From: Ginglymostoma cirratum
Taxonomy: Eukaryota
Length of the DNA stretch: 38,988 nt
Assembly (NCBI GenBank): GCA_024137785.1
Contig: JAHRHZ010000116.1
Location: forward strand, 441,433 to 480,420
Reading direction: 5' to 3'
Under the pieces are notes generated by a model, which saw only the letters and a list, made by a program, of their open reading frames with translations, was not told the origin of the DNA and did not search any database. The stretch's first letter is position 1; each line of letters begins with the position of its first letter. Positions 1-31,377 of the stretch are shown piece after piece. A program made the position numbers and the translations under genes.

Positions 1-328
1 AGAGGTTACACTTCAAGTTCCAGCTGCCAGAATTCGACTAAATTGGCGTTTGGGACTCCTAACTGGAATCATCATTCCCAACATTTACGTTCAGACTCTA
101 AATAGAAAAAACAAAAACGCGTGTGTGGGGGTTTAACATTTTAAAAATTCTATACATTCACGCCAATGTCACAATTACTTTAGAAACAAAATTGTGGAGC
201 ATAACGTGGTAGGAATCAATACACGTTTGCTTCTTTTGACCCCAAGAATAACTGTTCTTTTTCGTTTACTGCTGTGAAAATCTGAAGAGAAACTTGTTGT
301 AACATGTAATTCATGGGCAATAACCGTG

Positions 329-605
329 TTGTAACACCATGAGCTACAGGCATAAGCAGCTTCAATTCTTATGTCTTGAATTCCAAGCGAAAGGGCGTTT
401 ACTGCTTTCTTCACATGTACAACAAATCACTATGTGATGGAGATTTGCTCCCACTCTGTACAAGCCTGCATCTTCTGAGGGGAAATGTCGGTCTTAGAAA
501 GGATAACAACAAATGTGACTCTAATAAATTTATGCCATTCGGAGAGACTAAGATGGCTTCCAGTTCTCAGTTTAGGGAATCTATGTCACTTACCGACAGA
601 AAGAG
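329..605 (-). pseudogene. Possible highly decayed antigen-receptor V exon
   Basis: Minus strand has a pyrimidine tract/AG acceptor before 605 and reads (stop)FVVHVKKAVNALSLGIQDIRIEAAYACSSW, resembling V FR3 (RF...SLxIxxxxxED.A.YYCxxW) with a small deletion. It is followed by CACGGTT (328-322) and ACAACAAGT (300-292, 21-bp spacer). No recognisable WYRQ or first Cys. Confidence 0.33.
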
Positions 606-675
606 CTTGAAAAATAAATAGAGAGGTTATTCGGTGGAGCCTGTGATAAAACCCATTCAGGATAAAATTTGTATC

Positions 676-1460
676 AGAGATAAAAGGTACTGCAGATGCT
701 GGAGAATCCGAGATAACAAGGCGTGGGGCTGGATGAACACAGCAGGCCAAGCAGCATCATCGGAGCAGGAAAACTTGACGTTTCGGGCCGAGACCCTTCA
801 TCAGAAATGGAGGAGGGGAAGAGGGTTCTGAAATAAATAGGGAGAGAGGGGGAGGCGAATAGAGGATGGATAGAGGAGGGGATAGGTGGAGAGGAGGCAG
901 ACAGGTCGAAGAGGCGGGGATGGAGCCAGTAAAGGTGAGTGTCGGTGGGGGGGGGGGGGAATAGGGAGGAGATAGGTAAGTCCAGGGAGGACGGACAGGT
1001 CAAGGGGGCGGGATGATGTTAGTAGATAGGAGATGGGGTGGGGCTTGAGGTGGGAGGAGGGGATAGGTGAGAGGAATAACAGGTTAGGGAGGTGGAGATG
1101 AGCTGGGCTGGTTTTGGGATGCAGTTGGATGAGGGGAGATTTTGAAGCTTGTGAAATCCACATTGATACCTTTGGGCTGCAGGGTTCCCAGGATGAATAT
1201 GATTTGTTGTTCCTGTAGCCTTCGGGTGGCATCACTGTGGCATTGCAGGAGGCCCAGGGTGGACATGTCGTCTGAGGAATGGGAGGGGAAGTTGAAATGG
1301 TTCACGACTGGGAGGTGCAGTTGTTTGTTGCGAACTGAGCGCAGGTGTTCTGCAAAGCGGTCCCCAAGCCTCCGCTTGGTTTCCGCGATGTAGAGGAAGC
1401 CACAACGGGTACAGCGGATGCAGTATACCACATTGGCAGATGTTCAGGTGAACATCTGCG
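676..1460 (-). mobile_element. Penelope-like retroelement 3' fragment (GIY-YIG endonuclease plus pseudo-LTR)
   Basis: ORF 1084-1431 VYCIRCTRCGFLYIAETKRRLGDRFAEH...EQQIIFILGTLQPKGIN is a GIY-YIG domain, followed by a CT-rich terminal repeat also present at 24849-25397 and 19852-20016. Confidence 0.9.
777..804 (-). ncRNA. Minimal hammerhead ribozyme core in Penelope pseudo-LTR
   Basis: CTGATGA-AGGGTCTCGGCCC-GAAAC-GTC: CUGANGA box, stem II, GAAA box and GUC cleavage triplet. Confidence 0.8.
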
Positions 1461-2189
1461 CCCAACAAATGACAGAGTACCAGGTTATGTACGATCTGTA
1501 ATTTACGTTATAATACTAATTATATTTGTTTATGTTGCAATTGACAATGCTTTTTATCATTAACAGTACGCTACTTCATTTCTCTTCAAACTTTGACCTT
1601 TAATTTGTTTCTGTTTCTATTGTAACATAACCATTTCTCCTAGCCTGTGCTTGGTCTCAGTAGTTCATAACACCAGAGCATGTGTTCTATTACATTGACC
1701 TCACTCTATTAGAGTTGAAATTGGCGCCGTGCTTCACATGGTTACGTGACAAGTCCACATTTCAATTCACATGACAACATAAGCTTTGCCTTTGTGACGT
1801 TTCGTTGAGCCAGTTTTTGTTCCTATTAATTAAGATACAACTCGAATGTATATGAATTAATATTACATGAGGCCCAGAAATAATTGTTACTATGGTACAA
1901 GGCCATTTCAATTTTACATTAGACTGTTCACTGTTGCTGTTTTGATTACGATCAATTCTTTTTTGTCCTATGGCCTGTCTTGTGGTGACTCTCCATGTCT
2001 TCATCTCTTTTGTCTTTCCACAGTGTTGGTGCAAAATGTTCAATCACTTGGTATATATGAAGAATAATGTGGAAAAATGTGAGTTTATTCAGTGTGGCAG
2101 GAGAAACATATACATATGGCACGTCTGAAATGATAAGAAGTTGAATGGTTACAATGTCCATAAGGATCTCTGTGTCATTACCCAGAAGT

Positions 2190-2880
2190 AATTGGAAGTG
2201 ATCATGCAGCTACAAGAGGATATTAAGAAAGATGATTGAATGTTAGCCTTTATTGCGATAGAGTATGTGTGCAAGGGAGTGATGTCTTGGTTCAGATGTA
2301 TTTGGACATGGACAGGAAAAGTTTTGAACAATCTAGATCAAATGTATGCAATTATATCGAGTTTAGTTTGAGAAGGTTGGTCAGCACACAGGAGTTAGAT
2401 GAAGGGATCTGTTTCCGTGCTGTACAGCATTATGACTGCATGACTCTGACATTGTACAGAAAACACCTGGAGGACAGTGTACATTTTATCGCAGCCTAAT
2501 CACGTGAAAAAAACTATTGACATCGAGGAGTGCCACGAAGGCACTCCAGACTGGTTCCAAAACGATGAGACAGTGTTATGCACAGAGGCAAACTTAGCGT
2601 GTGTTCTGGAGAGTTTAAGGTGATAACATTGAAATTTGCACTACAATGAACGGACGAGATTGATTTAATGCAGATAAGAGGTTTCCTTTCTATGTGAGTA
2701 GAGAATCATGTCATAATGCAATACTGATGTGTATGCATCTGAGGTCTGAGATGCGAGAATTTACTTTTTCTTTTGAAATTGTGAAACTTTAGAACACTCT
2801 ACTCCAGAGGACTGTGCGCAAGTTAGAACGTGGTAGATTTCTGATCGCTAATGTTGTACGAGATTATTGGATTGAGGTGA
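2190..2880 (+). mobile_element. Degraded CR1-type LINE 3' fragments
   Basis: Similarity to the CR1 copies at 37400-38110, including a (TATGACT)-like tail near 2430-2450. Confidence 0.55.
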
Positions 2881-29069: not shown

Positions 29070-29580
29070 AATGCAGTCTTAGATGGGATGTGGTCATGAT
29101 TAATTCTGACAATATTCAATTCCAGTTTTCTGCAATATCCCATAAGGCTCGAATCCCTTACTGATTAAAACTCTGTGTATTTCAACCTTGAATATATTTA
29201 ATAATCCTTCCTCGGCAACCCTCTACAGTGATTAATTCCATAAATACACTGCCCTCTGAGGGAAAATCTTCCTCCTTCTCTCTGTCTGAAATCCTTGCTC
29301 TGAGATAATATATTCTGTTCCTACACTCCTTCACAGGGGAAACTGTTCAGCATGCACCATACAAGGTCTCCGAGAAACGTATGCGTCAATCAGATAGCCT
29401 CTCATTCTTCTGAACTCCAATGAATGCCAGCGCAATCTATTCAAATTTTCCTCAAAGGGAATTATTTCCATTCTTGCAATCAACTGATTGGAGATTTTCT
29501 GGACTCCTTCCAGTACCAGTTTATCTTCCCTTAGAAACGGGGAGGAAAGATGTGAAAATCTAGCCACATATATTGTTGTC
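29070..29580 (-). mobile_element. CR1-type LINE 3' fragment
   Basis: EENLNRLRWHSLEFRRMRGYLIDAY, the CR1 ORF2 C-terminal motif. Confidence 0.75.
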
Positions 29581-30820
29581 AAAACATCCTAATTTTTATG
29601 CTGCAATCACGCAAGTATACAATTAGGTCAGAAGAACAGGGAACAGAAGCTGCGGAAGCCGGGGAAACTACAGACTCAAATCAGACTAAATGTGCTGTGA
29701 CTCATAGTTGCTCTCAGAGCTGATGGTGCAGCAATAGCGACGGTTGGATATTCAGTCAGAACTCTGTGACCTTCCTGCACCTGCTCGTTGTTCAACGAGT
29801 TTGACATTGAAAAAAAAAGTAGAAAACGCTTCAAAAACCAGATCATGAATTGTTCAGGCATAGAATTGGTCACACTTTTCAGCACGCCTTTGAAAGAGAT
29901 ATTTAATGTCACACTTTGCCCACTATTTACATTGGCTAAACAGCTCAGTGCTTTCACCTGACCACGTTTTAAACAATTAGAAGTAAATATTCTTCTGCCT
30001 TTACATCTCAGTTCTTAAAAAGACTGCAATTTAATTATAACAACTAAAATTTCACACTTTTTATTTATCTTTTATAGGTGTGTTTGCAATATCGTTCTGT
30101 AAGTGAAGACCATTTAAGTATGGAATGTTAAAGTGTGTCTGCGCCAGCTTGACCGGCCGAAGAGACGGTTTCTGTGCTGTATTCTTCATTGATATTACTT
30201 TTTCTAGTGTGGGAAACAATAAAATGCGATCTTCTTTTACCACTTAACATTGTAGCATCTCAATCAAATATATCGTTTAATTGTTTTGCTTCAGGGAGAC
30301 AGACAAGAGTTTCTGTCACCTGCTATCTTTTTGTAAATATTGACAAGTTTATACATTGAATACTTATATTTCTGACCTTGCTCCAATGAATAAAGAGTCA
30401 CAAGTCTTGGGACATAACTGATTTTCTCGTCTTTTTCAATTTGAAAAATATCAGACCTAAAATGTTGGCGTACTGACAGAAGCAGAGAAAACGTTTAAAT
30501 CTTGCATGGTTATTCCAACTATGACCCCAGAGCTTTGAACTCCTACGGATATGGGGATTGCGTGCAATGCCTGAGATATAAATCTTCAGCAACAACATGG
30601 CCACATTTGGAAAAGATCATTGATGCCAAGTCCTATCGGTTTTCTACTGTAACAGAAAACACTTAACATTTTTTAAATATATCACCTTCGTGTCTGATAT
30701 TAAGAAGTAAACCCAGAACAGGGCAACGTCAACTTATATGGAAACTGAAGAATACTGTTGCAAAACACCCAACAGTTTGACAACTGCACAGAGTATAAAC
30801 GGTGAGTGTTGCACTGAGTA

Positions 30821-30859
30821 GGTTTTGGTACGGTCCTCATCGATCTTCGTTCCACTGTG
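30821..30859 (-). other. 23-bp-spacer recombination signal sequence (23-RSS)
   Basis: Perfect heptamer CACAGTG (30859-30853), exactly 23 bp, nonamer ACCAAAACC (30829-30821; 8/9). Confidence 0.95.
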
Positions 30860-31132
30860 TCTCTACTGCACAGAAATAGGTGGCACTGTCTATCATTCGA
30901 GCGTCATGAACATTCAAAGCACTGGTCTTCTCTGTCGAACTGAACCGAGCCTTGATCCTGCCCCGATCACCAGTACCGCTCACCAGATGTTTCATGGCTC
31001 CATTCGGGTCCTGTCTGTACCACTGTAGTATCCGCCCTGATTCTGTGGTGGAACAAGAAAAGTTGGCAGTTTTTCCCTCGATAACGACCACTGACTCTGA
31101 AGATTGAAACACCTCGTTTCTGTTAGAAGCAG
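30860..31132 (-). CDS. T-cell receptor alpha/delta-type variable (V) exon, germline
   Basis: NEVFQSSESVVVIEGKTANFSC...LQWYRQDP...GRIKA...DSATYFCAVE with both Cys and Trp; phase-1 acceptor TTTTCCGAAG; abuts the 23-RSS. Confidence 0.9.
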
Positions 31133-31319
31133 CTTCGGAAAATATATAGAAAAACAGAAACAACATAAATTTAATATTGTATAATTGAGTTTAATACAAT
31201 GCAATACAATACAATGAAGTACAACGTAAAATGATTCAAAAATGCAGAAATATCAATCTAACAGAACTTATCAGCATGTTACGTTAAATATTTCTGACAG
31301 AATTATCAGCCACACTCAC

Positions 31320-31377
31320 CAAAAGGGAAAAGTAAGTAATTTAGGGAGATGAGGAGAAAAGTAAAGCTCAGCTCCAT
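31320..31377 (-). CDS. Leader (signal peptide) exon of the V segment
   Basis: ATG...MELSFTFLLISLNYLLFPF G|GTGAGT, 58 nt, phase 1, 187-nt intron, in frame with the V exon. Confidence 0.88.

What the first reader, a model, noticed from the sequence alone, without database searches (positions are those of the whole stretch)
292..31377. Orphan GPCR array interleaved with rearranging T-cell receptor V segments
Seen: order along the minus strand is intact V+23-RSS (31.4-30.8 kb), intact GPCR 3, V pseudogene (17 kb), GPCR pseudogene 2, intact GPCR 1, possible V relic (0.5 kb); all V elements are co-oriented with RSSs facing lower coordinates. Established: RAG-mediated deletional joining removes DNA between a V and its D/J partner, and mammalian TRA/TRD loci have olfactory GPCR genes at the distal V end. 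Inference: if D/J segments lie downstream in the same orientation, use of this V would excise these receptors, so each T-cell clone could carry a V-dependent GPCR complement, or bring retained GPCR promoters under the TCR enhancer. That would be an unusual coupling of a ligand-sensing receptor repertoire to V(D)J choice. No D, J or C segment is visible in the window.
Basis: partly seen in the sequence, partly recalled or inferred. Interest (0 to 1): 0.88.

Follow-up and report, generated by a model that had tools for sequence, protein, structure and literature searches.

The report
GPCR genes inside shark TCR V array
A working shark T-cell-receptor V gene sits next to two intact genes and one dead gene of a large shark-specific receptor family, much as smell-receptor genes sit among mammalian TCR-alpha V genes. 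Nothing found here suggests the receptors act in T cells.

Summary
One V gene segment (30821-31377, minus strand) is intact, with a canonical 23-RSS. Public RNA shows its leader intron spliced and the V joined in frame to two different J segments.

Two GPR139-like class A GPCR genes on its RSS side are intact, and a third is a pseudogene. Three corrections apply:
- The GPCRs are two-exon genes. A 23-codon first exon lies 2-3 kb upstream of the main ORF.
- The pseudogene is on the plus strand.
- The 17-kb V relic is only a decayed FR3 with a heptamer, and the 0.5-kb relic has no homology support.

The assembly gap lies in intergenic DNA and touches no feature.

The functional reading is not supported. 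Mammals already have OR genes among distal TRAV segments and trypsinogen genes inside TRB, as passive bystanders. The GPCR family has more than 1,000 elasmobranch proteins and lies on several chromosomes. GPCR3 exon 1 was absent from the RNA data that held the TCR transcripts.

The best reading is a mixed birth-and-death gene cluster, in which loss of GPCR genes in T cells is a by-product of V-J joining. First readers noted the same interleaving on at least nine other windows of this genome; none of those notes has been checked.

The parts
31320..31377 (-). V gene leader exon (L-part1). The ATG is at 31377-31375. The exon is 58 nt and ends in phase 1.
   Evidence: Sequence. The splice joint 31320|31132 is seen in a polyA RNA read (X4) and in contigs of X3 and X1.
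31133..31319 (-). Leader intron of the V gene, 187 nt, GT..AG on the minus strand.
   Evidence: table 5: the joint skips 187 letters with ends CT..AC on the plus strand.
30860..31132 (-). V exon (L-part2 plus V region), with the conserved FSC, WYRQ and YFCAVE positions. It is of the TCR alpha/delta type.
   Evidence: Pfam V-set 4.9e-11. The best PDB matches are nearly all TCR alpha V domains, with one TCR delta and a few engineered antibody fragments, at 1e-17 to 1e-9. It is joined to J in RNA contigs.
30821..30859 (-). 23-RSS: heptamer CACAGTG, a 23-nt spacer, and nonamer ACCAAAACC.
   Evidence: It is the only RSS hit beside a V-like element; shuffled sequence gives 0.42 hits per window.
30000..30859 (-). 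3' part of a germline (unrearranged) V transcript that runs through the RSS. It ends near 30000, downstream of AATAAA and ATTAAA signals.
   Evidence: A 1224-nt X1 contig is spliced at the leader intron and colinear from 31132 to 30000.
25911..25980 (-). GPCR3 exon 1: the ATG plus 23 codons (MHGPAKGIFYAIGYPVLAVIGVP), then one base and the donor g|gtaagt.
   Evidence: tblastn with the N-terminus of orthologue P0002 matches 22 of 23 residues.
22852..23753 (-). GPCR3 exon 2, from the acceptor cttacag| to the stop. With exon 1 the CDS is 972 nt (323 aa).
   Evidence: Pfam 7tm_1 1.8e-20. It is 97% identical to whale shark P0001 and 83% to C. plagiosum P0002. The orthologue clade has support 99-100.
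17052..17337 (-). Decayed V relic: an FR2/FR3-like stretch with a frameshift, EDARMYHCAVKS, the heptamer CACATTG (17052-17058), and no nonamer.
   Evidence: Sequence. PDB phmmer hits from E 0.004 upward are mostly V-domain FR3, largely VH or nanobody, with insect DSCAM Ig domains among them. Pfam finds nothing.
15005..16595 (+). GPCR pseudogene on the opposite strand. Exon 1 is 15005-15073 and exon 2 runs from 15738. It has two in-frame stops, a frameshift near 16467 and a 4-codon deletion.
11871..12013 (.). Assembly gap (143 N) in intergenic repeat-like DNA. It interrupts no feature.
7813..7882 (-). GPCR1 exon 1: the ATG plus 23 codons (MHAPANGPVFAICYPILAAIGAP), then the donor g|gtaaaa.
   Evidence: tblastn with the N-terminus of P0028 matches 23 of 23 residues.
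3814..4715 (-). GPCR1 exon 2, from the acceptor ttattgcag| to the stop. With exon 1 the CDS is 972 nt (323 aa).
   Evidence: Pfam 7tm_1 2.2e-19. It is 88% identical to C. plagiosum P0028. The orthologue clade has support 100.
322..417 (-). It is unsupported by homology.
   Evidence: Motif scan (0.04 expected by chance, but the test was post hoc). There are no V-domain hits in Pfam or PDB.

Best explanation
The window is a piece of the V region of a shark TCR alpha/delta-type locus. An earlier follow-up note names the genome as nurse shark.

It holds one functional V gene segment that is transcribed in germline form and is joined by RAG to J segments. Embedded in the same array are members of a very large elasmobranch-specific family of two-exon class A GPCR genes. 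Databases name these 'probable GPR139', but they are only distant relatives of GPR139.

The two gene families share a region that evolves by duplication and decay. That explains the mix of intact genes, one dead GPCR and at least one dead V.

The GPCRs are independent transcription units. The germline V transcript ends at a polyA site about 860 nt past the RSS, which is 4 kb before GPCR3 exon 1.

If joining is deletional, T cells that use this V, or any V further from J, lose these GPCR genes on that chromosome. That loss is a passive by-product, as it is for OR genes among mammalian TRAV segments and for trypsinogen genes in TRB.

Shown: the anatomy, V splicing and V-J joining, the GPCR gene structure, and orthology with long-term constraint. 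Inferred: the locus identity, deletional joining, and the bystander status of the GPCRs.
For: V gene:
- Its closest solved relatives are TCR alpha and delta V domains.
- The leader intron is spliced in RNA.
- An unrearranged spliced transcript runs through the RSS to about 30000.
- There are two in-frame junctions: CAV-RRA-NSLIFGG and CAVD-P-YDNTKLIFG (my translation).

GPCR genes:
- Pfam 7tm_1 is matched above its cut-off.
- Exon 1 and the splice sites give 323 aa, the commonest length among listed family members.
- GPCR1 against GPCR3 gives dN/dS 0.19 with dS 1.33.
- Each has its own orthologue clade in other orectolobiform sharks. The two C. plagiosum orthologues have the same 'longest_contig' length, 15.33 Mb, so are probably on one scaffold.
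- The copies share homology only in coding sequence, so the duplications are old.

Family size and spread: 1,174 proteins at E<=1e-60; every named one of the 120 listed is from an elasmobranch. They lie on several large contigs per species.

Mammalian precedent: PMC2275272.

Expression: GPCR3 exon 1 had depth 0 in all four runs laid. X1 and X3 among them hold this V's transcripts, and X4 yielded three reads, one of them spliced.
Against: - No J, D or C segment is in the window. Linkage to a constant gene and the direction of joining are not shown.
- GPCR expression was tested only for GPCR3 exon 1, in four runs of unknown tissue. Contigs and thin read samples cannot prove silence.
- Run X3 holds 0.28 of the sampled words of 21600-31500. 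Only about a quarter of that lies in the part I laid. About 2 kb of 21600-25499, which holds GPCR3 exon 2 and repeats, is therefore present in that RNA assembly and remains unexplained.
- First readers noted the same interleaving on at least nine other windows. One of them (s1-879731) noted a GPCR copy 3-5 kb behind a co-oriented V. The matching spacing here is 4.8 kb from the RSS to GPCR3 exon 1. This could mean the pairing is more regular than a chance neighbourhood.
Confidence: 0.7

Rival explanations
1. V(D)J recombination is functionally coupled to the GPCR repertoire. V choice would decide which GPCR genes a T-cell clone keeps or expresses, or it would place retained GPCR promoters under the TCR enhancer.
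For: The V rearranges and the GPCR genes lie on its RSS side. Two of the three are co-oriented with it. Both intact GPCRs are under constraint. First readers noted the interleaving repeatedly in this genome, but those notes are unchecked.
Against: - No GPCR3 exon 1 signal was found in RNA data that hold this V's transcripts.
- The germline V transcript ends 4 kb before the GPCR.
- The family is spread over several chromosomes in other sharks. According to scan notes it also lies beside Ig and MHC-like genes.
- Mammalian OR and trypsinogen genes in TCR loci are passive.
- Only one chromosome is affected per rearrangement.
Confidence: 0.05
2. The region is primarily a GPCR gene cluster into which a few V segments were carried by segmental duplication. 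It would be an outlying or satellite V group rather than the core TRA/TRD V array. This V would then reach J only by very long-range or inversional joining.
For: Within 39 kb there are three GPCR genes and only one live V. The nearest orthologues of the GPCRs cluster on one scaffold per species. No J or C segment is in the window.
Against: The V is used with at least two different J segments, at contig depths of 8 to 24.
Confidence: 0.17
3. The order of features is partly an assembly artefact. The join across the N gap, or the scaffold itself, would wrongly put the GPCR1 block next to the V-bearing block.
For: There is a 143-N gap of estimated size at 11871-12013, with repeat-like DNA on both sides.
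Against: GPCR3, the pseudogene, the V relic and the live V all lie on one side of the gap in uninterrupted sequence. The interleaving therefore does not depend on the join.
Confidence: 0.05

Closest known systems
Olfactory receptor genes interspersed with distal TRAV segments (TRAV1) at the 5' end of the mammalian TRA/TRD locus
   Same: Class A GPCR genes of a large multigene family lie between functional TCR alpha/delta V segments. They would be removed by deletional V-J joining of more distal V segments. No T-cell role is known (PMC2275272).
   Different: The GPCRs here are not ORs. Pfam 7tm_4 is not matched by the intact copies. They have a two-coding-exon structure and belong to an elasmobranch-specific expansion. 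According to unchecked scan notes, the interleaving recurs across many windows and is not limited to the locus edge.
Trypsinogen genes inside the TRB locus
   Same: An unrelated multigene family is embedded between the V and D-J-C parts of a TCR locus and is conserved across species as a bystander (PMC2275272).
   Different: It involves a different locus and a different protein family. Conservation of the arrangement across species could not be tested here.
GPR139 (and GPR142), vertebrate orphan class A receptors
   Same: GPR139 is the closest solved structure by sequence, and it is the automatic name given to most family members.
   Different: The match is only 46.7 bits (E 2.6e-11) over the 7TM core. 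The family has over a thousand members in elasmobranchs rather than one or two conserved genes. This is a naming resemblance and does not show orthology.

Membership tests
TCR alpha/delta V gene segment | Split leader, short intron and V exon, shown to be spliced | tested here: met
   Exons are 31320-31377 and 30860-31132, with a GT-AG intron of 187 nt. The joint is seen in RNA.
TCR alpha/delta V gene segment | V-set Ig domain with the conserved Cys23, Trp41 and Cys104, most similar to TCR alpha/delta V domains | tested here: met
   Pfam V-set 4.9e-11. FSC, WYRQ and YFC are present. The top PDB hits are nearly all TCR alpha/delta V domains.
TCR alpha/delta V gene segment | Canonical RSS with a 23-nt spacer at the 3' end | tested here: met
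   CACAGTG, 23 nt, then ACCAAAACC at 30821-30859.
TCR alpha/delta V gene segment | Found joined to J (or D-J) in transcripts | tested here: met
   There are two in-frame V-J junctions with J-type LIFG motifs in X3 contigs.
TCR alpha/delta V gene segment | Linked in cis to the TRAC or TRDC constant gene | not testable with these tools
   The window holds no J or C segment.
Class A (rhodopsin-like) GPCR | 7tm_1 profile matched above the curated cut-off across seven helices | tested here: met
   70.4 and 73.9 bits against a cut-off of 30.5, covering profile positions 2-260.
GPR139 orthologue | Close, one-to-one similarity to vertebrate GPR139 | tested here: not met
   The match to human GPR139 chains is only 46.7 bits. 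There are 1,174 paralogues and orthologues at E<=1e-60 in elasmobranchs, so this is a lineage-specific expansion.
Vertebrate olfactory receptor (OR) family | Match to the OR profile (Pfam 7tm_4) and a single coding exon | tested here: not met
   The intact copies give no 7tm_4 hit. The pseudogene fragment gives 20 bits against a cut-off of 27. The genes have two coding exons.
   GPCR3 exon 1 had depth 0 in X4, X5, X3 and X1, while the V is present in X4, X3 and X1. The tissues are unknown, only one exon was tested, and GPCR1 was not tested.

The most novel reading that the evidence does not exclude
The interleaving may not be a chance neighbourhood. Across elasmobranchs, a family of more than a thousand two-exon GPCR genes would have been co-amplified with TRA/TRD V segments as regular V-GPCR units. 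The GPCRs would be expressed in developing or mature T cells. V-J deletion would then sculpt a clone-specific set of ligand receptors, or rearrangement would change their regulation.
Probability: 0.05. Interest if true: 0.85.

Novelty: new variant of a known kind. Interest (0 to 1): 0.4.

Why it matters
Non-TCR multigene families inside TCR loci are known, so the layout itself is not surprising. Three points are still worth keeping:

- **No published account found.** The nurse shark TRA/TRD germline locus had no assembled description in the 2018 paper I read (PMC5931798). My searches of the held library found no paper on this GPCR family in sharks.
- **Size of the family.** It has over a thousand proteins in elasmobranchs, and both copies here have been kept intact since before the orectolobiform genera split. 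[quoted passage not shown] That makes this family a candidate for an unstudied sensory or signalling repertoire.
- **Gene model.** The corrected two-exon model explains why the long ORF of GPCR3 lacks an ATG. It also explains why a whale shark database model (P0001) carries an odd, probably spurious N-terminus.

If the V-GPCR pairing proves regular and conserved, it would bear on how TCR V arrays expand.

Tried and rejected
Neighbours of the orthologues in whale shark, bamboo shark and others could not be read, so cross-species synteny with V segments is untested.
- A protein search with the V exon found nothing. V segments appear to be missing from that collection, so co-location of V and GPCR genes by contig could not be shown either.
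- Five paper searches for this family in sharks found nothing relevant.
- I first read GPCR3 as lacking a start codon and GPCR1 as N-terminally truncated. I dropped that once exon 1 was found.
- I looked for a recent V-GPCR cassette duplication by self-alignment. The copies share only coding homology.
- An Rfam scan of the window at gathering thresholds found no RNA family, including no hammerhead.
- The 0.5-kb relic has no V-domain similarity.
- The search of earlier findings does not accept coordinates outside the window.
- The joined two-exon GPCR models were translated only inside a script, to check frame and length. All searches used single exons or ORFs by reference.

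
Full report
**Gap first.** The only N run is 11871-12013, 143 letters long. It lies in repeat-like intergenic DNA. It is 3.9 kb above GPCR1 exon 1 and 3.0 kb below exon 1 of the GPCR pseudogene. No claimed feature spans it, and the ORFs listed across it are artefacts of reading N as X. I did not try to fill it. Continuity is unknown, so the linkage of GPCR1 and the 0.5-kb site to the rest depends on the scaffold join. 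GPCR3, the pseudogene, the V relic and the live V lie together on one side in unbroken sequence.

**The V gene segment.** It lies on the minus strand.
- An ATG at 31377 opens a 58-nt leader exon that ends g|gtgagt. The V exon runs from 31132 to 30860 and encodes FSC, WYRQ and YFCAVE.
- Pfam V-set is matched at 4.9e-11.
- The best solved relatives are almost all TCR alpha V domains, with one TCR delta and a few engineered antibody fragments among the 60 shown.
- The coding end is followed by CACAGTG, 23 nt, then ACCAAAACC (30859-30821). Under the same criteria, shuffled sequence gives 0.42 hits per window. The only other hit, on the plus strand at 4868, has no V next to it.

**RNA evidence for the V.** I laid reads and contigs of four runs on 25500-31499.
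- The 187-nt leader intron (31133-31319) is removed in a raw polyA RNA read (X4) and in contigs of X3 and X1.
- A 1224-nt X1 contig is spliced at the leader. It then runs colinear through the RSS to 30000, just past AATAAA and ATTAAA signals. This is a germline transcript of the unrearranged V with its own polyA site.
- X3 contigs leave the genome at 30865 and 30862. Read on the minus strand, the loose letters give CAV-RRA-NSLIFGG and CAVD-P-YDNTKLIFG. Both are in frame and both have a J-type FG motif. The translation is mine, from the 30-letter consensus rows.
- So this V is a used TRA/TRD-type V, joined directly to at least two J segments. The constant region, and deletion versus inversion, cannot be seen.

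**The GPCR genes.**
- tblastn with the two long ORFs finds three copies: 3817-4761 (minus), 22855-23820 (minus) and 15707-16595 (plus, with stops and a frameshift).
- The long ORF of GPCR3 opens with TTG, with a stop 17 codons upstream and no ATG. GPCR1 looked eight residues short at its N-terminus.
- Searching the window with the first 60 residues of the nearest orthologues resolved both problems. A separate 23-codon exon lies upstream of each copy:
  - GPCR1: 7882-7813, 23 of 23 residues identical to C. plagiosum P0028.
  - GPCR3: 25980-25911, 22 of 23 identical to P0002.
  - Pseudogene: 15005-15073.
- Each exon 1 ends in one extra base followed by GT. Each long exon begins after a pyrimidine tract and CAG.
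- The joined frames give 972 nt, or 323 aa, for both intact genes. That is the commonest length in the family.
- I translated the joined models only in a script and sent them to no search tool.
- All three first exons are preceded by a pyrimidine tract and aaag|acgATG. This may be the acceptor of a further non-coding exon, but that is inferred only.

**What the GPCRs are.**
- Both match Pfam 7tm_1 well above its cut-off.
- The nearest solved protein is GPR139, at only 46.7 bits. 'GPR139-like' is therefore a label of convenience.
- The family is very large. There are 1,174 proteins at E<=1e-60, and every named one of the 120 listed comes from a shark, skate or ray. The Atlas places GPCR1 in several 'probable GPR139' and 'FMRFamide receptor-like' chordate clusters.
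- GPCR1 and GPCR3 are 64% identical, with dN/dS 0.19 at dS 1.33. They share no flanking homology.
- In a quick tree, GPCR3 groups with whale shark P0001 and C. plagiosum P0002 (support 99-100). GPCR1 groups with three Chiloscyllium proteins (support 100) (quick search, SH-aLRT support only).
- The duplication therefore predates the split of these orectolobiform genera, and both copies have stayed intact since.

**The V relics.**
- Near 17 kb the minus strand reads RSTLFFDGAQESNIILSNDAVVEDARMYHCAVKS, followed by CACATTG. There is a frameshift to an FR2-like piece and no recognisable nonamer.
- Pfam is silent on it. PDB phmmer hits have E-values from 0.004 upward. Most are Ig/TCR V domains, largely VH or nanobody, aligned at FR3, and a block of insect DSCAM Ig domains is mixed in. 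I accept it as a decayed V, possibly of an Ig-like type, with low confidence on the type.
- The 0.5-kb site has the motif EAAYAC and a two-mismatch heptamer. Such a pair is expected 0.04 times per shuffled window. The test was post hoc, and neither Pfam nor PDB supports it. I do not count it.

**The interpretation.**
- The RSS faces lower coordinates, and all three GPCR genes lie on that side. Deletional joining of this V would therefore remove them from that chromosome. That part is sound but conditional.
- The step to a functional coupling is not supported.
- The bin holding GPCR3 exon 1 (25900-26099) had zero depth in both raw RNA runs and in both RNA assemblies. Both assemblies carry this V's transcripts. 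This is weak negative evidence: the tissues are unknown, only one exon was tested, and contigs drop rare forms.
- The germline V transcript stops 4 kb short of the GPCR.
- In other sharks the family occupies several large contigs per species, although the nearest paralogues concentrate on one. Ten of eleven whale shark hits lie on an 11.73-Mb scaffold, and five of five basking shark hits on one 65-Mb contig.
- In mammals, TRAV1 segments are interspersed with OR genes, and trypsinogen genes sit inside TRB, without any known T-cell role (PMC2275272).

**Loose end.** Run X3 holds 0.28 of the sampled words of 21600-31500. The pieces I laid account for only about a quarter of that share. About 2 kb of 21600-25499 is therefore present in X3. 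That part contains GPCR3 exon 2, but it also contains repeat copies at 24844-25405.

**Context from the scan (unchecked notes).**
- First readers recorded GPR139-like genes interleaved with TCR V segments on at least nine other windows of this genome. One lies 382 kb before this window on the same piece.
- They also noted family members beside an Ig minilocus and an MHC class I-like gene.
- A follow-up note names the genome as nurse shark.
- One note reports a GPCR copy 3-5 kb behind a co-oriented V. Here the RSS-to-exon-1 distance is 4.8 kb for the single live pair.
- None of these notes had been followed up, and I could not read those windows.

**Limits.** Cross-species synteny of V and GPCR genes is therefore untested.

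**Verdict.**
- The most useful products are the proof that this V is used, the corrected two-exon GPCR gene model, and the pointer to a large, apparently undescribed elasmobranch receptor family that shares ground with the TCR V array.

Noticed in passing
window 22852-25980; protein P0001: The whale shark database model of the GPCR3 orthologue (P0001, 386 aa) replaces the conserved 23-codon exon 1 with about 85 residues that look like transposon ORF sequence, spliced at the same acceptor. It is probably a mis-annotation (my reading of the residues).
   Followed up: partly
window 7883-7900, 25981-26000, 14990-15004: All three GPCR first exons are preceded by a pyrimidine tract and the shared letters aaag|acgATG. 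This looks like a splice acceptor and suggests a further upstream non-coding exon.
   Followed up: no
window 30000-30859: The unrearranged V is transcribed, spliced at its leader, and apparently polyadenylated about 860 nt past its RSS (AATAAA near 30066, ATTAAA near 30035).
   Followed up: partly
window 31500-31680 (beyond the laid stretch): The rearranged-V contig of run X3 extends at least 181 nt upstream of 31499. The 5' UTR would be at least about 300 nt, which is long for a V gene, unless an upstream start or exon is used.
   Followed up: no
window 673-1013, 19847-20016, 24844-25405, 33760-33828: These are copies of one short repeat at 87-96% identity, including an inverted pair at 24874-25405. 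The element next to the first copy carries a weak GIY-YIG-like ORF (1084-1431, Pfam E 0.009), so it may be Penelope-like.
   Followed up: partly
window 13238-14650: This is low-complexity CA/TG-rich DNA that yields long 'THTHTH' ORFs on both strands, with an internal inverted repeat (13238-13396 against 14490-14650).
   Followed up: no
window 17066-17074: The FR3 of the 17-kb V relic contains an embedded perfect heptamer complement (CACTGTG) across the YHC codons. It resembles the cryptic heptamers of VH genes. Together with the VH-like FR3 hits, this hints at an Ig-like V type.
   Followed up: no
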